Source of the DNA: Octopus bimaculoides
Lineage: Eukaryota
Direction: 5' to 3'
Assembly (NCBI RefSeq): GCF_001194135.2
Contig: NC_068991.1
Span: 17,446,996 to 17,498,694, forward strand
DNA length: 51,699 nt
The position numbers and the translations under genes were made by a program. This document shows, one piece after another, positions 3,504-45,959 of this stretch (positions are counted from its first letter, which is position 1; each line of letters begins with the position of its first letter). The notes below the pieces were generated by a model. That model was not told the origin of the DNA. It did not search any database and worked only from the letters and a program-made list of their open reading frames with translations.

Positions 3504-3839
3504 ATTAGATTAGATTACAATTCATTATATTATATGAATTAGATTACAATTCATTACATACATGTACATAAATTCGATATTACATTTATAGATTNNNNNN
3601 NNNNNNNNNNNNNNNNNNNNNNNNNNNNNNNNNNNNNNNNNNNNNNNNNNNNNNNNNNNNNNNNNNNNNNNNNNNNNNNNNNNNNNNNNNNNNNNNNNNN
3701 NNNNNNNNNNNNNNNNNNNNNNNNNNNNNNNNNNNNNNNNNNNNNNNNNNNNNNNNNNNNNNNNNNNNNNNNNNNNNNNNNNNNNNNNNNNNNNNNNNNN
3801 NNNNNNNNNNNNNNNNNNNNNNNNNNNNNNNNNNNNNNN

Positions 3840-10664: not shown

Positions 10665-13500
10665 TACCTTACCTGCCTGGTTAAAGCAGGGCGGCGAGGT
10701 AGTCATCACTATGTACTCGGCTGAAAGACGGATCCTTCTAACGCGTGACAGCAGCTGTTCTACATAACTCCACAGGTCAACAATGCTCAGACAGCGAACA
10801 AGTGCATGCAGAACGGTTTCGTAGCTCTACGCTCATCTCATACAAGCCCGTCTGACGGTTCATCCGTGCTTGTAGAGTATATCTCGAACCGGTAGCGCCT
10901 CTTGATAGAACTGCCAGGCCAAGGACTCCTGGAAATTATCTATGATAGTCCCTAGCCTGAAAGGACTCCGAAACAAACTAGCCAATTCGTTTTTATCGAC
11001 GTTCAGAGACTCGTCGAGAACGTCATCATACTTCCCTGTTACTATTCTTCTACAGATTTCTAAAGTGGAACATCCATCAATCCCATTGCCCGACTCGTAG
11101 AATGTGGTGAGCGACTGGTGATACTGTAAGTGTCAGGCACCCAGTTTCAGTCTTTGCTTCACCAAAGACCTGCAGCTCAGTCAAGGACACGAGCTTCAGA
11201 AAGACGTACGTACCTCACGAATGGTGCCGACACAGGTTCCTCGTCCAAGAATTGTTGCAGGTGGTGCAACCTCAATGCGTGTCTGAGCATCAACAGCTAC
11301 CGCATACCTAAGCTGCCACTCTGAGGGTACTGGCAACAGACTGACCACTTGACCAATGGAACGCGTCCCTTCCACGGGAAACTGAATACAGACGCTTCAA
11401 CCTGATCCGATGGTAGCTAGGGCAAGGCACAACGATCAGGCGTCCTTTCAGTGACAGTTTCGTCTCTGCCAATTTCTGGGTAAGTTTGGCCATCTTGTTC
11501 ATCACCTCCTCCCAGTTCTTACCCACCTGGAGGTCGGAACCAAACCAGACTCTGAGCTGTTTAACCGATCCCTCAGTTCAGCGTCCGATAACGCCGTCCG
11601 ACAATATGGAGCTACATCTCCAAGTCCCTAGCTGCAAGTGTCCCGATTTGTTGGTTTTAATCTTGGCACCTAACACTGATTTGTATTCCTTTAGAACGGT
11701 CCAACCGTCTCTACTTCGGAGGCGTCCGACACCATTACGATGACGTCGTCCGTGTACGTCGGCACTACCCTCCCGGGTCCTAGTTCGAATGGGATACCCC
11801 TCAGCTGTCCCAACCTCCGCAGCAGTGGTTCGAGAACCAGTACATACAGAAGAGGCAAGAGCAGGCAGTTCTAACGGACCAAGTGTGCATTGCGAAACGG
11901 TTCCGATTGGTAGCTATTTATTTTGAGCATTAAGTAGCGACCGAGTTCAAAATGACTTCCAAGTAACGATGGTCGACCGTATCGAATGCCTTCGACTGAC
12001 CCAAATTGATCAAAGCCACACTGACGCACAAAGTAGGAGTTGCTGTGAATATATCTGTTCGGGATTGCGCACGTTTGCGCTTCCTCACCCTGCCCACCAA
12101 CGACAAGCACCAGTCTTTTCGCTAAAACTGGTCAGTCTTAAACTCTGTGTTTAGCAGAGTTATAACCCGACGTCCTTCCTCAGCCGCACTGTCACAGCTG
12201 CAGGAATTCTTCCTTTCTACTGCCAGTTGTCAAACAAATTTCGAGTTAACTTTCCCAAAATTTGAAGCAGAGACTTTTCAGCACTCGCTCATGTCTATAT
12301 TTAACGACCTGAAGTTATTGAGTAAGTGACCGTGCTTCCAAGCTGACCCCGAAATCACGCACATTTATACATCCGACTCTGAGGACAGCTATGCTAGCAG
12401 GAGAAAAATATGGGAGGTCACTAAATTTAGCTCTCAAGGAGGTCGATTGATTCAGAATCCTGATTGGTTGAGCGAGAAGTTTTGAAAGGTCTTTGCAAAA
12501 CATTTCTATTAGGCATTTTTCTAAACTAACATAAAATGGAAAACTTTCACCTTTAAATCTAAGTATTTTTGTAGATCTGTCTATATTAAGAGTCTATCTT
12601 TGGGAATATTGGGGGGTGAGCCTTCCCCATTAGTAGCTATGCATTTGTTATTTAAAACTTCTTTGAATTCAATGTTGCTCTTTAAAACTAGAGTAAAGCT
12701 GATGTGACTTTTCTTGTGAATTTTCACTGTTGTTTTTATTAATCTTGTGATTTGTTTTTCCTGTGATTGTGGTTGAAATAGTGTTTGCGATTAACTTGAT
12801 TTTCACAGAACTCCATAGTTGGATATCTCGCCTCAACTTCGTCGCTTGGAGAAGTCTCTAGTCTAGGGCGGTTTGTAGTAGTCGAAGAAGAGAGTCTGTA
12901 ATTGTGCATATTTGTGTTTTTCTGTGGTGAGTTGTAAGTGTTAGGGGCTTTTATTTTGAAGTGAGTTTGATATTGTAGTTTGCTGTTGTTTGGAGATGTC
13001 TATTGTTGTTGTTCTTACTGCTGCTGCAACAGCAGATACTTCAGTTTTTAATTACTTTTCTAATGTTTCTGCGATGATTTTTGCTGTTGCCAGCTTTGTT
13101 GTAGTTGTTGTTGATGCTGTTTTGTACGTGGCATTGGCAGGAACGCAGTATTTTTCCCGCTACTTTTTGTTGCTGCGGTTGGTACTATTACAAAAGTAGC
13201 TGTGGTTGGCGCTATTCCCCTCTGCCACCGTAATATTCAATTTTTGTCGAATTGGGAGTTCTGCATAATCCAGGATTTTGTCCAGATTTTTTTTTAGCTT
13301 GGCTTGAATGATGACTTCCAGCTCAATTTCTGATCACTTTTCCACTCGGATGCAAGTCATCATTCTCTTCTCTCGTACTTGGACGATAACTTCTGAAAAA
13401 AAAAAACATCACCCGTTTTGTTGATATAATGTCTCAAAGCAACTATTCTCACTTTTAAATGCTCCATATCAAATATTTACAAAGAACGAATCTTAACTAG
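10665..13500 (-). mobile_element. Decayed Tx1-clade LINE: ORF1 remnant, start of APE, large internal deletion, RT and C-terminus
   Basis: Minus-strand motifs LRVGCINVR (~12390-12360), ITLLNTEFK, AQTCAIPNRYIH, VALINLGQSKAFDTVDHRYL (~12030-11965), YTDDVIVMVSD (~11757-11725) and KNWEEVMNKM..KLSLKGR. Degenerate CCHC knuckle S-YF-C-NSTN-R-SNKK-* near 13200-13160. Many stops and frameshifts. Confidence 0.85.
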
Positions 13501-27115: not shown

Positions 27116-28197
27116 CTGAAGTAAAGAAGAAAGGTATATGTTTAGTTTTTATTGAAGCAAACAGATAGAAATTAAAATTACACACAAAACAAGCAACTAT
27201 AGTTACACTTACATATACAGTTTATTGACTGAGGTTGTACAGGTAATATACTGTACTAGAGTGTTATCTGTCCTATAACAGGTGATGTTATATAGGTAAC
27301 AATTATAATTATACAGTTTTTCAAATTTCTTGGTGCATACAAACTAACAAAATAGAAACTAATTTTCAAAATTAAAATCAAATCAAATAAAATATAACAT
27401 TCTCATCAGTATTCTTTTATTTGTTTCAGTCAATTTGACTGCGACCATGCTAGAGCACTGCCTTTGAGGGTTTTAGTCAAAGAAATCACTCTCCGGACTT
27501 ATTCTTTGTAAGCCTAGTACTTATTCTATTTAGCTGCTCTTTCTGGCAGGTCACACAACTATGCGGAACCTTTCTTGCTGGTTTAGTTGGTAAAGGTGAA
27601 AAGGTTAAGTTTTATATATATATATATATATATNNNNNNNNNNNNNNNNNNNNNNNNNNNNNNNNNNNNNNNNNNNNNNNNNNNNNNNNNNNNNNNNNNN
27701 NNNNNNNNNNNNNNNNNNNNNNNNNNNNNNNNNNNNNNNNNNNNNNNNNNNNNNNNNNNNNNNNNNNNNNNNNNNNNNNNNNNNNNNNNNNNNNNNNNNN
27801 NNNNNNNNNNNNNNNNNNNNNNNNNNNNNNNNNNNNNNNNNNNNNNNNNNNNNNNNNNNNNNNNNNNNNNNNNNNNNNNNNNNNNNNNNNNNNNNNNNNN
27901 NNNNNNNNNNNNNNNNNNNNNNNNNNNNNNNNNNNNNNNNNNNNNNNNNNNNNNNNNNNNNNNNNNNNNNNNNNNNNNNNNNNNNNNNNNNNNNNNNNNN
28001 NNNNNNNNNNNNNNNNNNNNNNNNNNNNNNNNNNNNNNNNNNNNNNNNNNNNNNNNNNNNNNNNNNNNNNNNNNNNNNNNNNNNNNNNNNNNNNNNNNNN
28101 NNNNNNNNNNNNNNNNNNNNNNNNNNNNNNNNNNNNNNNNNNNNNNNNNNNNNNNNNNNNNNNNNNNNNNNNNNNNNNNNNNNNNNNNNNNNNNNNN

Positions 28198-29185: not shown

Positions 29186-29229
29186 CTATCAGCAGTTTTG
29201 ATAAAATCCCAACTCTTTGCCTCACCATT
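29186..29229 (-). CDS. NUDT14: NUDT14 exon 2b: NGEAKSWDFIKTAD(S)
   Basis: Acceptor actttttttctatag, donor AG|gtaaga; 44 nt, phase 0 to 2; aligns to human NGAQKSWDFMKTHDS. Confidence 0.92.
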
Positions 29230-30697: not shown

Positions 30698-31298
30698 AAT
30701 GTGTGTGTGTGTGTCTGTGATGATGAGAATGTAAGTAACTTATGACNNNNNNNNNNNNNNNNNNNNNNNNNNNNNNNNNNNNNNNNNNNNNNNNNNNNNN
30801 NNNNNNNNNNNNNNNNNNNNNNNNNNNNNNNNNNNNNNNNNNNNNNNNNNNNNNNNNNNNNNNNNNNNNNNNNNNNNNNNNNNNNNNNNNNNNNNNNNNN
30901 NNNNNNNNNNNNNNNNNNNNNNNNNNNNNNNNNNNNNNNNNNNNNNNNNNNNNNNNNNNNNNNNNNNNNNNNNNNNNNNNNNNNNNNNNNNNNNNNNNNN
31001 NNNNNNNNNNNNNNNNNNNNNNNNNNNNNNNNNNNNNNNNNNNNNNNNNNNNNNNNNNNNNNNNNNNNNNNNNNNNNNNNNNNNNNNNNNNNNNNNNNNN
31101 NNNNNNNNNNNNNNNNNNNNNNNNNNNNNNNNNNNNNNNNNNNNNNNNNNNNNNNNNNNNNNNNNNNNNNNNNNNNNNNNNNNNNNNNNNNNNNNNNNNN
31201 NNNNNNNNNNNNNNNNNNNNNNNNNNNNNNNNNNNNNNNNNNNNNNNNNNNNNNNNNNNNNNNNNNNNNNNNNNNNNNNNNNNNNNNNNNNNNNNNNN

Positions 31299-31701
31299 TC
31301 TCTTTTACTCTTTTACTTGTTTCAGTCATTTGACTGCGGTCATGCTGGAGCACTGCCTTTAGTCGAGCAAATCGACCCCAGGACTTATTCTTTGGAAGCC
31401 TAGTACTTATTCTATCGGTCTCTTTTGCCGAACCACTAAGTTGCGGGGACGTAAACACACCAGCATCGGTTGTCAAGCGATGCTGGGGGGACAAAAACAC
31501 AGACACACAAACATATATATATATATATATATATACATATATACGACAGGCTTCTTTCAGTTTCCGTCTACCAAATCCACTCACAAGGCTTTGGTCGGCC
31601 CGAGGCTATAGTAGAAGACACTAGCCCAAGATACCATGCAGTAGGAATGAACCCGGAACCATGTGGTTGGTAAGCTAGCTACTTACCACACAGCCACTCC
31701 T
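31299..31701 (-). mobile_element. SINE family A, full length, between exons 2a and 2b
   Basis: High identity to 41616-41995 and 18428-18813. Confidence 0.9.
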
Positions 31702-31907
31702 ACTAAATGAAGAATTTAGTAAAATAACCTTGTTGTTATTAAGAGGGTGTTTGGAACATGAATTAACATGAAATTCTGGTGGAAGATTTTAGTTCAGATT
31801 ACTTTAACCCTTCAGTTATCATATTTAGTTATCAGATTGTTGGAATACACTACCTTTATTTTTTGAAAATAATGATGAATTTAGTATAAAAATAAACTTA
31901 TTATTAA

Positions 31908-32921: not shown

Positions 32922-33366
32922 GTGGAGGAGCAATGGCCCAGTGGTTAGGGCAGTGGACTCGTGGTCATAGGATTGCGGTTTCGATTCCCAGACCGGGTGT
33001 TGTGAGTGTTTATTGAGCGAAAACACTTAAAGCTCCACGAGGCTCCGGCAGGGGATGGTGGCGAACCCTGCTGTACTCTTCCATTACAANNNNNNNNNNA
33101 CGAGGCTCCGGCAGGGGATGGTGGCGAACCCTGCTGTACTCTTCCATTACAACTTTCTCTCACTCTTACTTCCTGTTTCTGTTGTGCCTGTAATTCAAAG
33201 GGTCAGCCTTGTCACACTGTGTCACGCTGAATATCCCCAAGAGCTACGTTAAGGGTACATTTGTCTGTGGAGTGCTCTGCCATTTGCATGTTAATTTCAC
33301 GAGCAGGCTGTTCCGTTGATCAGATCAACTGGAACCCTCGACGTCGTAAGCGACGGAGTGCTAACA
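32922..33366 (+). mobile_element. tRNA-derived SINE family C with 12-bp TSD
   Basis: A box tggcccagtgg, B-like ggtttcgattccc; TSD actatcaactgc at 32910-32921 and 33367-33378; the internal duplication at the 10-N gap is an assembly artefact. Confidence 0.9.
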
Positions 33367-35000
33367 ACTATCAACTGCACCAGAAAAATATTGCCACAGA
33401 TACTTGTACCCTTAATGTAATTCTCATGCAAATCAGCATGACACTGTGTGAAACAAGGCTGGCTCTTTGAATTACAGGTAGAGCATACCTCACAGGCTTC
33501 CATGCAGTTTCTATCCTACACAATTTCACTCACAAGACTTGCATTGACATGAGGCTATGATGGTAGAAACTATCTGAACCTTATGATTGGAAAGTGAAGT
33601 TTTTAGCCCTTTACCTATCTCTGTATATTATTACAAAACATTTTAATTTTATAGGTTAAACATTGTGGATTGTCCACGGCACCCATGTGTGTGTCTGTAT
33701 ATACACACACACACAGATTTCACATATGTACACACACACGTTTGAATTTAAACAAGGGGTTGGTATAGAGTAATCCATGTCCTCTTTCTCCTCCTCTCCA
33801 CCACCATCAACATCTTATATTTGCTTTCCATGAGTTGGATGGATTGTTGTGTTCTGAATTATTTTTTATCTGTAGTTACAACTTTCCTCGATGGGTCAGA
33901 GGACCATACCTTGCATATACATTTCATTCATGGCTCAGTTTCTATGGCTGGGTTCCCTTCCTGAAACTAATCACTCTACAATGACTGGTGGTAGGATGTC
34001 AATACATATAACAGAGTTAACTTTCATTTGAAGTTGAAGATTCACAACTGAGTTTTGGACTTCAGTTTTTCACTTCAACTGGAATTCAAAATTTTAAGGA
34101 TCAGACTTTGGCATTAGGAAAGCAGGAAGGGTATCCTGTCACAGAAACCATCCAATCTCTGCCAGCATGGATGGTGGACATTAAATGATGATGATAATGA
34201 CACTTTTATGACATCTCAAGGTCAGAGGCCAATAGCTTATAGCTTTATAAATTTGAACACAAGTATTTGAGATATAGCAACGTGATGGAAAATGGAAAGA
34301 GAGAGAGTGATGAAATGAAAGTGAGTGCGATGGTAACATATGATGTGAAATGCTCTGCCTAAATCCATCATACTGGGTAGTTGGGATTTTTTTCATATAT
34401 AAATTCTTGTATATACATGCATAAAGATATGTACAAACATGGAACTTTTTCTTTTATTATGGCTTAATTAGATGAGGAAGAGTTTAATCTATAGTCTTTG
34501 ATGATAGTGGTGGTGGTGGTGGTGGTGGTGGAATTATGATTCATAGATTACTGCAGCAGGAAGCAACACAACTCAAGCTATAGAGCTAGCCATCACACCT
34601 GAGACCAGGTGTGAATACGTGCAACAGACAAGTTCATTAAATAATATCTGATGCAATTTTGATGCAATTACTTTTGCATCAGATGTCCCTTAATTTACAA
34701 GGACATTACTCATGCACATGTATTTTTCAAATTCTAAAAACATAAAAGCTATGTCACATGTGCATATATTTTAATATTGGGATAAAGAATCTTTTTCGTG
34801 AGTCATTTCTCGGTGAACCTGCTGACTCTGATGACTCATTGCTTCTTGGCTGTCACCAGTATGCTTCATCAATCATACATTTGCACATGTGAACACTTCC
34901 AATATCTACCTGCAACACCATGCAAATAACAAAGAAAAAAAAACACAAATATGCACACAGGTAGACACACACAAGAAAAAATATTAGTGAAATTACCTAC

Positions 35001-35044
35001 CTATCGTGTTCTTTTAAAACATCTATGACTTTCTCTCGGTTATT
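35001..35044 (-). CDS. NUDT14: NUDT14 alternative exon 2a: NNREKVIDVLKEHD(S)
   Basis: Acceptor tttttaccccccactccag, donor AG|gtaggt; exactly 44 nt, phase 0 to 2, open frame; gap-free alignment to exon 2b and human exon 2 (N28, K32, D35, K38, D41, S42; H40 shared with human). Confidence 0.8.
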
Positions 35045-35399
35045 CTGGAGTGGGGGGTAAAAATTTATAATTATAATCTAGTCGTTCATGATGACGCAGA
35101 CAAGATTTCATCATACAACAACGATTTATTTGTTCTACAAACTACAACTGTTATGGCACATCCCACTATGGCCGAGCCAATGAGAGAGAGAGAGCTATTA
35201 TACTGTTACTTGACTTGTTAGATATGATAGCTAAATGTTCCTTAAAATCACACATTTGTCTTAAATAGAAAAAAAGGACATATTGGACAACGTAGCCTCT
35301 GACATACAAAAAGACTAGTGGGTCATGGTTGGAACATTTATGATGGTAGGTCTGCTCAACCAGGGCTGACTTTGAGCTAAACAACACTGCTGCAGCACT

Positions 35400-36284: not shown

Positions 36285-36525
36285 GTCAAGACAAGGAGAC
36301 ACAAACACACAGACAGACACACACACACACATACACACTTACAAATACAATAGACTTTTTTTCAGTTCCTGCCGATCAAATCCACTCAGAAGGCTTTGGT
36401 TGGCCTGGGACCAAAGTAAAAGACACTTGCCTAAGGTTCCATGCAGTGGGACTGAACCCAGAACCATGTGGCTGGGAAGCACATGGTTCTGGGTTCAGTC
36501 GAACTTCTTACCACACAACCACACA
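36285..36525 (-). mobile_element. Degenerate SINE family A (5' part)
   Basis: aaatccactca.aaggctttgg...gacacttgcc.aagg...cagtgggactgaaccc. Confidence 0.7.
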
Positions 36526-36889: not shown

Positions 36890-37210
36890 TATATCTTTTA
36901 TCTGTTTCAGTCATTAGACTGTGGCCATGCTGGGGTACCGCTTTAAAGAATTTTAGTTGAATGTATATCGAGTACTTATTTTTTTAAAAGTCTGATACTT
37001 ATTCTATTGGTCTCTTTTGACAAACTGCTAAGTTACAGGGACATAAACACACTAGCATTGGTGGGGGTAAAATAGACACAAAGACACACACACATAGATA
37101 TATGCACATACATATGACAGGCTTCTTTTAATTTCCTTCTGCCAGATCCACTCACAAAGCTCTGGTCAAACCAAGGCTATAGTAGAAGGCACTTGCTCAA
37201 GGCACCATGC
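36890..37210 (-). mobile_element. Degenerate SINE family A
   Basis: tgtttcagtcattagactgtggccatgctgg...ccactcacaaagc...ggctatagtagaagg. Confidence 0.75.
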
Positions 37211-37911
37211 ATACACACACACACACATTCATGTATGCATGCACATATAGTCCCCTCGCACTCTCTCCTGCTTGCTACTGTGGTTGCTTTGAGAATAGTC
37301 AGCAGAAATACTTGGCATTTGTTTAAGGACTTCCTAAAGTTTTAAGGTTGATATTTTTAGATCTTATATTTAAATCATCATCGTACCACCTGCCCCTCTT
37401 CCTCATCACCTAGCTTTCTCTCCTCCTCATCACTACCACCATCATCATAATATGCCTGCTTTCCATATTGTCTAAGGTGGACAAGTTATCATGATCTGAA
37501 TCAGTTCTTCAACAGGTCAGGGGATTACATCTTGCTAGTAGTTTCCAATTTTGACAGGATTTTTAATGCTGGATACCTTTGCTAACTAACACCAGTAACT
37601 TCACAGAATGTACCAAGTGCATTTTATTATAAAACCAACACCAGATAGGTTGGAATGCTCTTGATAAAACTAAAGGGCTCTCTTGACTCTGTGGTATCTC
37701 TATTTGCTCAAGGCAATATGACCAAAAGGAAGTGAACAGCGGATTGATGACAGTTGGGTCAAATGAGAGTGGGTGAGAGGAGCAAAAGAATGATGGGCAA
37801 AACAGTGTGATTTGGAGAGTGAAGGTGGAGTAATGGAAGAGTCATAGGGCAAGAAGGGGTAATGGAAGAGAGATAGTAAAGGCAGCTATATTTGCTGGTG
37901 TGTGTGTGTGT

Positions 37912-39341: not shown

Positions 39342-39422
39342 CTGTTTGTAATGTAACCTAATGGGTTTAATATATTTGGATTTGTCGAACGTCGACACAG
39401 TCACGTCACTAATGTTCTCCAT
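39342..39422 (-). CDS. NUDT14: NUDT14 exon 1 (coding part): MENISDVTVSTFDKSKYIKPIRLHYKQ
   Basis: ATG at 39422-39420, donor CAG|gtacgt; 81 nt, phase 0; aligns to human [27 protein letters not shown]. Confidence 0.93.
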
Positions 39423-41615: not shown

Positions 41616-41995
41616 ATACTCTTTTACTTGTTTCAGTCATTTGACTGTGGCCATGCTGGAGCACCGCCTTTAGTCGAGCAAATCGACCCCAGGACTTATT
41701 CTATCGGTCTCTTTTGCCGAACCGTTAAGTTACTGGGACGTAAAGACACCAGCATCGGTTGTCAAGCGATGTTGGGGGAACAAACACAGACACACAAACA
41801 TACACGCACACACACACACATATATATACATACATATATACGACGGGCTTCTTTCAGTTTCCGTCTACCAAATCCACTCACAAGGCTTTGGTCGGCCCGA
41901 GGCTATAGTAGAAGACACTTGCCCTACGTGCTACGCAGTGGGACTGAACCCAGAACCATGTGGCTGGTAAGCAAGCTACTTACCACACAGCCACT
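41616..41995 (-). mobile_element. SINE family A, full length
   Basis: Same bipartite structure with internal (CA)/(TA)n. Confidence 0.9.
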
Positions 41996-44200: not shown

Positions 44201-45959
44201 TTTATATATCAGATGTACACGACAGACTTCTTTCACTTTCCATCTCCTAGATCCTCTCACAAGGTTTTGGTCGGCCGGAGGCTATAGTAGAAGACACACA
44301 GTGGGACTGAACCTGAAACCATATGTTTAGGCATCAAGCTTCTTACCACGCCCGCGCGCAATTTGCCAAATAGAATTAAGATGGTTTAACTCTCTGGCGA
44401 AGAAAAAAGTATTACAGAGATAAAAACTCTATTTTGTTTTCTTCTTAATAAAAGGACGAATGGAAACACGTTCACTTAATATTAGGTGAAGATTTGCGAG
44501 CTAGATAGTTGTTAGTGGTCAAGTGCAAATAACTCTGTTTCCTTGCAAATAGCAATTACTTCCCTTGATATTTACATTTCGTTCTTTAACACATTATCTT
44601 TCGACTACGTTTTTTTTTTTTCGTACACATTTTTGAATGCATTGTTTTTGGGAAAGGAAAATACCTGAGTTACTGACACTCTAGAGACTAGATGTGGTTT
44701 GTGAATATAATAATCAATTCAGTTATTTTTCTTTTATTTTTAAGTTCTCAGTTCAAATACCTCCGAGGTCAACTTCGTCTTTCATCCTTTCGGGATCGAT
44801 AAAATAAAGTATCGATCAAGTACTAGGGTCGATGTAATCGACTTACAATCCTCCTCTCAAAAATCCCTGACACAAAGTCTAAATTAGAAACCATTCTAAC
44901 CGCTTTGCCTGCAGTTTTCTGGTCTAATACGAGTGAGGTGGTCCCATTTTGATGTTGCGCATTTTTTTTTTTTTTACTATTGATTGCTGGCGTGAATTAA
45001 GAGCTAGTTACAATGGAACGGTCATGTGATATATTCAGGTCCAATCAACAATGACTTTACGGAAAAATTTTAACTCAAAACCAAGAGGTCGTTAATCACA
45101 TACCTGAATCTCATGAGCCATTGTCGAAGCCTGTACGTGGACGTGCGTCCTGCTAGAAATAGCAACTAAATCCCCAACTCTTTGCCTGTCCTATGTATCA
45201 CATGCATATTTCCTAGGCATATTTCCTAGGACATATTTCCTAGGCGTACATGCATCATATATGATAAACATTACCAAATTTTTCAAGCATTAGAGTAACT
45301 TTATATTATTCAGAATGTATGAAACAAGATCTAACAAAAAGTCTGAAAATAAGCATTGGCGTTTAGGACAAACGTATGAAAACCTTTTGATAGGCAAAGG
45401 GTTAAATTACACCCTACTGTCTTATAAAAATAAACATATATTAGGTGTCATGGCCTTTATGCAGTATGCTTGAGAAAATAAAAAAAAAGAAAGACAAAAA
45501 CTAATGATTAACATGTGATCATAGATTCTTTAAGAATCTTCTGATTCCAGCCCATGAATTACAGAGACATCTCATCTCTAAGAATACTTGACAGTATTCC
45601 TTAATTTTGGGTGATAGTCTGAGTAAATATTGAAAACTTACCTTCAATTTTGGCAATAATCATTAAAAGTAACAGGAAAATTCCTTAAACATCTGACGAT
45701 ATGGCATTTCTAAAAATTCTTGGAAATATTTCTTTAAGCTACTAGAAGACATAACTAAAATATCTGGATGCATTCCTTAAAATGTTGGCATCACCTTAGT
45801 CATATTTCCTTTGGCATCACCTTAATCATATTTTCTAGCTCATCATAGGAATTTTCACAAGGAGAATCACAGCTTACCATGTTAATAGCCAAAGAATTTT
45901 GTTGGTCTATAGGTCACTAAAATTTTATTGTTTATAACCAAGGTATATTTATAACTCTG

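What the first reader, a model, noticed from the sequence alone, without database searches (positions are those of the whole stretch)
35001..35044. The two exon 2 variants split conserved active-site residues (W34 vs H40), suggesting a substrate-specificity switch
Seen: numbering matches human exactly through residue 42. Exon 2b keeps W34 but has A40; exon 2a has I34 but keeps H40 of the human HDS motif; Y17 in exon 1 is shared. Known (from memory, verify): in human NUDT14 structures W34 and Y17 of the partner subunit stack on the ligand heterocycle, like the W28/W46 pair of NUDT5. Inference: the isoforms may differ in preference among UDP-glucose, ADP-ribose and other NDP-sugars, or 2a may be a low-activity subunit that tunes the dimer through heterodimerisation. 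The reciprocal loss pattern looks like subfunctionalisation at the exon level.
Basis: partly seen in the sequence, partly recalled or inferred. Interest (0 to 1): 0.7.

Follow-up and report, generated by a model that had tools for sequence, protein, structure and literature searches.

The report
Octopus NUDT14 mutually exclusive exon 2a
This 44-base stretch is one of two interchangeable versions of exon 2 of the octopus NUDT14 (nucleotide-sugar hydrolase) gene; the exon pair is conserved from corals to molluscs, it swaps the strand that holds the nucleotide base, and in octopuses each version has lost a different near-invariant residue.

Summary
Window 35001-35044 (minus strand) is exon 2a of Octopus bimaculoides NUDT14. 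It has AG/GT splice sites, is 44 nt long and encodes NNREKVIDVLKEHD(S). Exon 2b (29186-29229) has the same length and phase and encodes NGEAKSWDFIKTAD(S). Using one exon gives a 210-aa protein. Using both or neither shifts the frame. Both isoforms are already RefSeq models (X1 = 2b, X2 = 2a).

New here: the same a-then-b pair of 44-nt exons is present in Argonauta, Mytilus, Haliotis and the coral Pocillopora. It is absent from a shark locus and a Lingula locus. Ancestral a and b exons both carry W34 and H40. The I34/H40 versus W34/A40 split is an octopod overlay, shared by Octopus and Argonauta.

Published structures show that W34 and D35 reach into the partner subunit's site, opposite Y17. 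W34 and H40 are each about 95% conserved across the family, but H40's contact with ligand is unverified. A change in substrate recognition is plausible and untested.

This is a new example of a known kind of feature (mutually exclusive exons from tandem duplication), of moderate interest. A speculative extension: only an a/b heterodimer would rebuild one fully canonical active site.

The parts
39342..39422 (-). NUDT14 coding exon 1 (M1-Q27; contains Y17). It ends in phase 0 at CAG|gtacgt.
   Evidence: identical to XP_014787558/9
35045..35073 (-). 3' splice region (polypyrimidine tract and AG) of exon 2a. It is conserved between Octopus and Argonauta although the rest of the intron does not align.
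35001..35044 (-). Exon 2a, the a-type and upstream member of the mutually exclusive pair. 44 nt; NNREKVIDVLKEHD plus the first two bases of S42; I34, D35, E39, H40.
   Evidence: RefSeq isoform X2; 81.5% nt identity to Argonauta, the highest of all exons
29186..29229 (-). Exon 2b, the b-type and downstream member. 44 nt; NGEAKSWDFIKTAD plus the first two bases of S42; W34, D35, T39, A40.
   Evidence: RefSeq isoform X1
27051..27115 (-). Exon 3 (65 nt). Its first base T completes codon 42. It encodes the first strand of the Nudix domain, VCVLLFN...KQFRP.
25415..25628 (-). Exon 4 (214 nt). It contains the Nudix box ...ELCAGIVDK...EILEECGY.
22848..23076 (-). Exon 5, coding part, including the TGA stop codon.

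Best explanation
Shown: the finding is exon 2a of Octopus bimaculoides NUDT14. It is the upstream member of a tandem-duplicated pair of mutually exclusive 44-nt exons. Because 44 is not a multiple of 3, a transcript that keeps both exons or neither is frameshifted with early stops, so only one-exon mRNAs encode the enzyme.

Shown: the same a-then-b pair exists in Argonauta, Mytilus, Haliotis and the coral Pocillopora. The most economical reading is a single duplication before the cnidarian-bilaterian split, with loss in some lineages (shark, Lingula).

Shown by model and literature: exon 2 encodes a turn, beta-strand 30-38 and the loop 39-41 that joins the N-terminal sheet to the Nudix domain. 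In human NUDT14, W34 and D35 on this strand reach into the partner subunit's active site. There they stack on and hydrogen-bond the ligand heterocycle, opposite Y17.

Inferred: splicing therefore exchanges the nucleobase-recognition strand while leaving the catalytic Nudix box untouched, which gives two kinds of active site. In octopods the a strand has an aliphatic Ile in place of the stacking Trp, and the b strand has lost the near-invariant His40. The two isoforms most likely differ in nucleotide affinity or preference, with 2b closer to the canonical base-binding mode.
For: - Gene model, splice sites and frame logic.
- Not a chance match.
- Both isoforms are RefSeq models in O. bimaculoides and O. 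sinensis, and both are annotated in O. vulgaris.
- Purifying selection on 2a: Octopus and Argonauta align only at exons, and 2a is the best conserved (81.5%, with its 3' splice region). It keeps 10/14 residues, against 64% identity for the whole protein. O. sinensis differs by one synonymous base.
- Orthologous a/b pairs, same order, 44 nt each: Argonauta L001, O. sinensis L002, Mytilus L003, Haliotis L004; Pocillopora L005.
- Each of the six a-type exons scores higher against an a-type exon of another class than against any b-type exon.
- Coral transcripts carry a alone (P0033, P0038, P0204), or a plus b with a frameshift (P0206, P0207).
- W34/D35 of chain A and Y17/L107 of chain B contact the ligand: PMC11089510.
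- The AF2 model of the 2a isoform has pLDDT 93.5, with strand 30-38, loop 39-41 and strand 42-49. It superposes on human NUDT14 9GZV_A with TM 0.92.
- Nudix-box glutamates are invariant and lie in the shared exon 4.
Against: - No enzymology and no RNA-seq junction counts were available, so the expression level of 2a in octopus rests on annotation models.
- H40's role is unknown.
- Ancestral a and b exons differ mainly at positions 29, 36-39 and 42. The original purpose of the pair may therefore have nothing to do with W34 or H40.
- The similarity signal separating a from b is modest on 15 residues (mean BLOSUM62 34.5 for a-a against about 30 for a-b). Independent duplications with convergence are not excluded.
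- The Pfam NUDIX score is just under its cut-off for both isoforms.
Confidence: 0.5

Rival explanations
1. Down-tuning isoform. 2a gives no new specificity. Without the stacking Trp it simply yields weakly active sites, so the a:b splicing ratio sets total NUDT14 activity. The two exons are a rheostat, not a switch.
For: W34 is 95% conserved and is a main stacking residue. NUDT5 work links stacking strength to Km (PMC3203587). Mytilus also lost W34 in its a-type exon.
Against: Gastropod and coral a-type exons keep W34, so the ancient a-type exon was not a crippled copy. 2a is under strong constraint, and its H40 and E39 are invariant in all a-type exons.
Confidence: 0.22
2. Heterodimer complementation. 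W34 acts in the partner's site, and residue 40 sits next to its own subunit's site. An a/b heterodimer would then have one fully canonical site (W34 from b, H40 from a) and one doubly altered site. Both homodimers would lack one near-invariant residue in every site.
For: In NUDT5 the base site combines Trp46*/Glu47* of the partner with Trp28 and Arg51 of the own subunit (PMC3203587). In NUDT14, W34/D35 are chain A and Y17/L107 are chain B. H40 lies in the loop where NUDT5 carries R51 plus a 7-residue insertion, and in loop 39-41 that leads into the chain's own Nudix domain. The reciprocal losses are shared by Octopus and Argonauta.
Against: The position of H40 relative to the ligand was not checked on coordinates. 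Co-expression of a and b in the same cells is unknown. H40 may be purely structural.
Confidence: 0.13
3. The exon choice affects something other than catalysis, such as stability of the swapped N-terminal sheet or dimer, a protein partner, or localisation. Positions 36-39 and 42, not 34 and 40, would be the functional difference.
For: The columns that separate a from b in all phyla are 29, 36-39 and 42 (E39 and D42 in a; V/T39 and S42 in b). The segment is a beta-strand in the intertwined dimer interface.
Against: The same strand carries the two ligand-contacting residues, W34 and D35. No partner or targeting signal is evident in 15 residues.
Confidence: 0.12
4. 2a is a decaying or noise exon. 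It would be a relic duplicate that is spliced in occasionally and annotated by automated pipelines, with no function.
For: For octopus, only model-based isoforms were available. No Logan transcript contig encodes either full-length isoform.
Against: It is the best-conserved exon between Octopus and Argonauta, while the introns do not align. Frame and splice sites are intact in four octopod species. Orthologous a-type exons are expressed in corals and annotated in bivalves and gastropods.
Confidence: 0.03

Closest known systems
Human NUDT14 / UDP-glucose pyrophosphatase (PDB 8OTV, 9GZV, 9GEM, 3Q91)
   Same: Full-length homologue (E 1e-46, gapless numbering through residue 68). The model superposes on it with TM 0.92. 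Y17, D35, the Nudix-box glutamates and the five-coding-exon layout fit. Exon 2b matches the human peptide at 10/14 residues.
   Different: No second exon 2 was seen in the one vertebrate locus examined (shark); the human locus was not examined. Octopus has two alternative exon 2 copies, and neither has the full W34 plus H40 set.
NUDT14 isoform pairs in Mytilus, Haliotis, Babylonia and Pocillopora (RefSeq X1/X2)
   Same: Same exon, same 44-nt length and phase, and the same a-upstream, b-downstream order where loci were read. The a-type signature is acidic residue 39 plus H40.
   Different: Gastropod and coral a-type exons keep W34, and their b-type exons keep H40. Mytilus a-type has V34. The octopod a-type ends AG|T (S42) instead of GA|T (D42).
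NUDT5 base sandwich (Trp28 / Trp46*, Glu47*, Arg51)
   Same: Domain-swapped dimer in which an N-terminal strand of one subunit supplies the stacking Trp and a base hydrogen bond to the other subunit's Nudix site. W34 aligns with W46 and D35 with E47.
   Different: NUDT5 has a 7-residue insertion carrying R51 where NUDT14 has T39-H40. I found no report or annotation of alternative exons for this strand in NUDT5.
Classical tandem-duplicated mutually exclusive exons in enzymes and channels (from my own knowledge: PKM exons 9/10; in the searched literature: ATE1 7a/7b, SCN-alpha 5a/5b)
   Same: Homologous adjacent exons of equal length, of which exactly one is used. The isoforms are identical except for one structural element at a functional or subunit interface. 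The pair is ancient.
   Different: How the exon is chosen here is unknown. Only the reading-frame (and presumed NMD) constraint is shown. No competing RNA structures or regulators were examined.

Membership tests
NUDT14 (UGPPase) subfamily of Nudix hydrolases | Full-length sequence similarity to characterised NUDT14 | tested here: met
   phmmer E = 1.2e-46 to human NUDT14 chains, residues 1-204. All the closest named metazoan homologues are annotated NUDT14.
NUDT14 (UGPPase) subfamily of Nudix hydrolases | Nudix fold with the N-terminal beta-sheet domain of the ADPRase-like group | tested here: met
   AF2 model pLDDT 93.5. Foldseek top hits are all human NUDT14 (TM 0.92), followed by NudK and ADPRases.
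NUDT14 (UGPPase) subfamily of Nudix hydrolases | Nudix-box catalytic glutamates (…E x2 E E x G Y) | tested here: met
   E114, E117, E118 and G120 are invariant in a 58-sequence alignment and present in the shared exon 4.
NUDT14 (UGPPase) subfamily of Nudix hydrolases | Pfam NUDIX (PF00293) at gathering score | tested here: inconclusive
   19.6 bits (2a) and 18.6 bits (2b) against a cut-off of 21.1. Most homologues also carry no precomputed Pfam hit.
NUDT14 (UGPPase) subfamily of Nudix hydrolases | Base-stacking pair Y17 / W34* and D35* in one polypeptide | tested here: not met
   This is not met for isoform 2a, which has Y17 and D35 but I34 in place of W34. It is met for isoform 2b (Y17, W34, D35).
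NUDT14 (UGPPase) subfamily of Nudix hydrolases | Hydrolysis of UDP-glucose, ADP-ribose and ADP-glucose; homodimer | not testable with these tools
   Needs recombinant protein.
Mutually exclusive exons from tandem exon duplication | Adjacent exons that are homologous, with the same length and phase | tested here: met
   Both are 44 nt and span the phase-0 to phase-2 boundaries. Both align to human residues 28-41.
Mutually exclusive exons from tandem exon duplication | Each exon has functional-looking splice sites | tested here: met
   2a: polypyrimidine tract, cag| and |gtaggt. 2b: t-rich tract, tag| and |gtaaga. Both are conserved in O. sinensis and Argonauta.
Mutually exclusive exons from tandem exon duplication | Including both or neither destroys the product | tested here: met
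   Both the 88-nt and the 0-nt versions frameshift with early stops. Coral a+b transcripts show the predicted frameshift.
Mutually exclusive exons from tandem exon duplication | Mature mRNAs with exactly one of the two exons | tested here: inconclusive
   RefSeq X1 and X2 models exist in two Octopus species, with matching O. vulgaris models. Single-exon a-type transcripts exist in corals. No octopus read-level junction data could be examined.
Mutually exclusive exons from tandem exon duplication | Conservation of both copies across species | tested here: met
   Octopoda, Bivalvia, Gastropoda and Cnidaria. Absent in shark and Lingula.

The most novel reading that the evidence does not exclude
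In octopods the two exon-2 variants have each lost one of two near-invariant residues that the dimer contributes to the same active site from opposite subunits (W34 in trans, H40 in cis). Only the a/b heterodimer would rebuild one fully canonical site, paired with one doubly altered site. This would make an ancient splice pair into an obligate, asymmetric heterodimer system produced from a single gene.
Probability: 0.13. Interest if true: 0.7.

Novelty: new member of a known kind. Interest (0 to 1): 0.45.

Why it matters
NUDT14 is poorly understood. Its N-terminal substrate-recognition domain was seen in a crystal only in 2024. I found no paper that mentions alternative exons for it.

An exon pair kept from corals to octopuses, which swaps exactly the strand carrying the base-stacking Trp and the base-binding Asp, is a natural experiment on how this enzyme class reads its nucleotide. 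It gives ready-made variants for specificity studies: I34, V34, or W34 combined with E39/D42. It also adds a rare example of a mutually exclusive exon pair that seems to predate Bilateria.

The octopod state, in which neither isoform has the full conserved residue set, makes a clear, cheap and falsifiable prediction about homodimers versus heterodimers.

The existence of the two isoforms themselves is not new, because they are already RefSeq models.

Tried and rejected
- Chance ORF: rejected.
- Repeat-derived sequence: rejected. The 44-mer is single-copy and no Rfam or tRNA features were found.
- A third exon-2 copy hidden in the assembly gaps of the introns: unlikely. The gap-free O. sinensis locus has only two candidates.
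- The low-GC block at 16-22 kb is not biology. It consists of runs of N.
- Fetching loci through X2 isoforms or some X1 or representative proteins failed, because only one product per gene is indexed. As a result echinoderm, annelid and arthropod loci were not examined.
- A profile search with eight a-type N-termini returned only four short coral proteins. No decapodiform a-type exon was found, and squid-like transcripts show only b-type with H40.
- Literature: nothing on H40, nothing on NUDT14 mutually exclusive exons, and no newer NUDT14 structure paper in the library.
- A-to-I RNA editing cannot restore the lost residues. I34 is ATA, which editing could read only as Val or Met, and A40 is GCT, which has no A (sequence plus general knowledge).
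- Competing-RNA-structure control of exon choice was considered but not tested. Only AT-rich palindromes were seen by eye, and the introns are full of interspersed repeats.
- tblastx for the UBR1-like neighbour seen in Mytilus and Lingula found nothing in the window.

Full report
**What is at the coordinates.**
Window 35001-35044 read on the minus strand is AATAACCGAGAGAAAGTCATAGATGTTTTAAAAGAACACGATAG. It is preceded by a pyrimidine-rich tract ending in cag and followed by gtaggtaa.

A tblastn search with human NUDT14 places the whole gene on the minus strand. My recalled human sequence is identical to PDB 9gem_A. The exons are:

| Exon | Window coordinates | Length | Notes |
|---|---|---|---|
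| 1 | 39342-39422 | 27 codons | M1-Q27 |
| 2a | 35001-35044 | 44 nt | the finding |
| 2b | 29186-29229 | 44 nt | |
| 3 | 27051-27115 | 65 nt | |
| 4 | 25415-25628 | 214 nt | |
| 5 | 22848-23076 | 229 nt | includes the stop codon |

All exons have AG/GT boundaries. Exon 1 plus either 2a or 2b plus exons 3-5 gives an open 210-codon frame. Using both copies or neither shifts the frame and gives early stops.

- 2a encodes N28-N-R-E-K-V-I34-D35-V-L-K-E39-H40-D41.
- 2b encodes N28-G-E-A-K-S-W34-D35-F-I-K-T39-A40-D41.
- Both end in AG, which joins the T of exon 3 to make S42.
- Y17 lies in exon 1.

**Is it more than chance?**
There are 229 AG-[44-nt open frame]-GT candidates on the two strands of the window. 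Scored against the human peptide, 2b and 2a rank first and second (57 and 32; the next best is 11). The 44-mer occurs once in the window.

**Identity of the locus and prior annotation.**
The 2b protein is identical to XP_014787558.1, and the 2a protein to XP_014787559.1. These are NUDT14 isoforms X1 and X2 of Octopus bimaculoides. O. sinensis and O. vulgaris carry the same two exon-2 peptides. The pair of isoforms is therefore already in public annotation. I found no paper that mentions it.

**Constraint on 2a.**
- In the gap-free O. sinensis locus, 2a differs by one synonymous base (CAC to CAT).
- In Argonauta hians, only isoform X1 turned up in the protein searches, yet an intact a-type exon lies between exon 1 and the b-type exon. 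It is L001 4443-4486, with AG/GT, 44 nt, encoding NNRSRVIDVFTEHD.
- Octopus and Argonauta DNA aligns only at the six exons. 2a is the best conserved of them (81.5% over window 34994-35073, including its 3' splice region). The other exons are 70-78% identical.
- 2a keeps 10 of 14 residues, against 64% identity for the whole protein.

This rules out a decaying pseudo-exon.

**Age of the pair.**
RefSeq isoform pairs that differ in exactly this segment exist in several other animals:

| Species | a-type | b-type |
|---|---|---|
| Mytilus | NLKKKTVDLIWDHED | NGIKKIWDAMKVHDS |
| Haliotis rubra | NNEIRSWDIIKEHDD | NGIQKAWDAMKVHDS |
| Babylonia | NDEKKSWDLISEHDD | NGIQKAWDAIDVHNS |
| Pocillopora (coral) | NGLPREWDYVKEHDD | NGQERKWDYLTVHDS |

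- In every locus I could read, the order is exon 1, a, b, exon 3, with two 44-nt AG/GT exons. These loci are O. sinensis, Argonauta, Mytilus trossulus, Haliotis rubra and Pocillopora verrucosa.
- The a-type copies share an acidic residue 39 and an invariant H40. Outside cephalopods they also share D42, made by a GA|T split codon. The b-type copies share G29, V/T39 and S42.
- Each of the six a-type exons scores higher against an a-type exon of another class than against any b-type exon. The margins are small, as expected for 15 residues.
- Coral transcript assemblies carry a alone (P0033, P0038, P0204). Some carry a plus b with the predicted frameshift (P0206, P0207).
- A shark locus and a Lingula locus contain only the b-type exon.

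The simplest reading is one duplication before the cnidarian-bilaterian split, followed by losses. Independent duplications with convergence are not excluded.

**What the swapped segment is.**
An AlphaFold2 model of the 2a isoform is confident (mean pLDDT 93.5). It shows strand 19-27, a turn at 28-29, strand 30-38, loop 39-41 and strand 42-49. Exon 2 is therefore one whole beta-strand plus the loop that leads into the Nudix domain. The model superposes on full-length human NUDT14 chains with TM 0.92 and rmsd 2.1 A.

The first NUDT14 structure with an ordered N-terminal domain is 8OTV. In it, the inhibitor's heterocycle stacks between W34 of chain A and Y17 of chain B. It hydrogen-bonds D35 of chain A and touches L107 of chain B. 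The N-terminal sheet is intertwined with the other subunit's Nudix domain (PMC11089510).

In NUDT5 the equivalent site combines Trp46*/Glu47* from the partner with Trp28 and Arg51 from the own subunit (PMC3203587). A pairwise alignment puts W34 on W46, D35 on E47 and K38 on K50. H40 falls just after the point where NUDT5 inserts seven residues beginning with R51 (NUDT5 sequence verified).

**Conservation of the two residues.**
Among about 190 family members, including Campylobacterota proteins, W34 is present in 175 of 185 aligned sequences and H40 in 183 of 190.
- The W34 exceptions are the octopod a-type (I), the Mytilus a-type (V), two fungus-gnat paralogues (A) and one other sequence.
- The H40 exceptions are the octopod b-type (A in Octopus, S in Argonauta) and three others.
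- Squid-like transcripts keep H40 in their b-type exon.

Ancestrally, then, both exon types had both residues. W34 was lost in the a-type exon before Octopus and Argonauta split, and independently in Mytilus. H40 was lost in the b-type exon of octopods. RNA editing cannot restore either residue, given codons ATA and GCT.

**Interpretation.**
- Shown: a real, constrained and ancient pair of mutually exclusive exons. It exchanges the strand that carries the base-stacking and base-hydrogen-bonding residues, while the catalytic Nudix box in exon 4 is shared.
- Inferred: the isoforms differ in nucleotide binding. Whether that is a change of preference, a simple reduction of activity, or something about the dimer cannot be decided here.
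- W34/D35 act in trans, and the 39-41 loop belongs to the chain's own Nudix domain. An a/b heterodimer would therefore combine W34 (from b) with H40 (from a) in one site, and I34 with A40 in the other. This is an attractive but unverified extension. H40's distance to the ligand was not measurable with the tools at hand, and no paper in reach mentions H40.

**Verdict.**
- It is a new, undescribed member of a known kind (mutually exclusive exons from tandem duplication) in an enzyme family where none had been discussed.
- The isoforms themselves are already annotated.
- Interest is moderate.

Noticed in passing
window 3595-3839, 16021-16120, 17059-17763, 19015-20008, 21393-21986, 27634-28197, 30747-31298, 33090-33099: Eight runs of N (assembly gaps, 3764 bases in total). 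Three lie inside NUDT14 introns. They cause the apparent 16-20% GC block at 16-22 kb.
   Followed up: yes
window 31300-31703 (reference copy); also 41617-41995, 18429-18813, 20009-20227, 36894-37211, 36301-36480, 44203-44349, 27410-27529: An interspersed repeat of about 400 bp is present in many copies in the window, 72-86% identical and mostly in one orientation. It also occurs many times in the O. sinensis NUDT14 introns. No tRNA or Rfam match was found.
   Followed up: partly
L007 (Lingula anatina) and proteins P0009, P0013, P0182: Lingula NUDT14 isoforms X1 and X2 differ in the last coding exon, not in exon 2. P0182 reads through both copies, so the same gene has a different tandem exon duplication in a brachiopod. 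Its exon 2 is single.
   Followed up: partly
L004 (Haliotis rubra) 12156-13758: A tandem array (period about 66 nt, about 20 copies) lies in the intron after exon 4. It is built from the 3' end of exon 4 plus its donor site (…KVPLDSIEKVASYR|gt).
   Followed up: partly
proteins P0128, P0132, P0136 (Mytilus isoform X3, 179 aa): These isoforms start at M37 inside the b-type exon. They therefore lack the whole N-terminal recognition domain, including Y17 and W34.
   Followed up: no
proteins P0048, P0049 (Pseudolycoriella hygida): Two NUDT14 paralogues on one contig both have Ala at position 34. This is a further independent loss of the stacking Trp.
   Followed up: no
proteins P0054, P0062-P0069, P0099, P0112 (Helicobacter, Sulfurimonas and relatives): Campylobacterota Nudix proteins are about 40% identical to the octopus protein over the full length. 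The match includes the N-terminal strand with W34 and the HDS motif, which is unusually close for bacteria versus animals.
   Followed up: no
L003 1-2816 (Mytilus) and L007 1-713 (Lingula): A UBR1-like E3 ligase gene lies head-to-head with NUDT14 in both species. tblastx with those stretches found nothing in the octopus window.
   Followed up: partly
window 34507-34531 (plus strand) and the (GGT)n run, read on the minus strand, a few tens of bases downstream of the exon 3 donor (about 27000-27030): (GGT)n microsatellites lie in the NUDT14 introns, one of them about 30 nt after the exon 3 donor.
   Followed up: no
proteins P0121 and P0001: Pfam NUDIX scores fall just below the gathering cut-off (19.6 and 18.6 against 21.1 bits), although the proteins are clear NUDT14 orthologues. 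Domain-based annotation would miss the family.
   Followed up: yes
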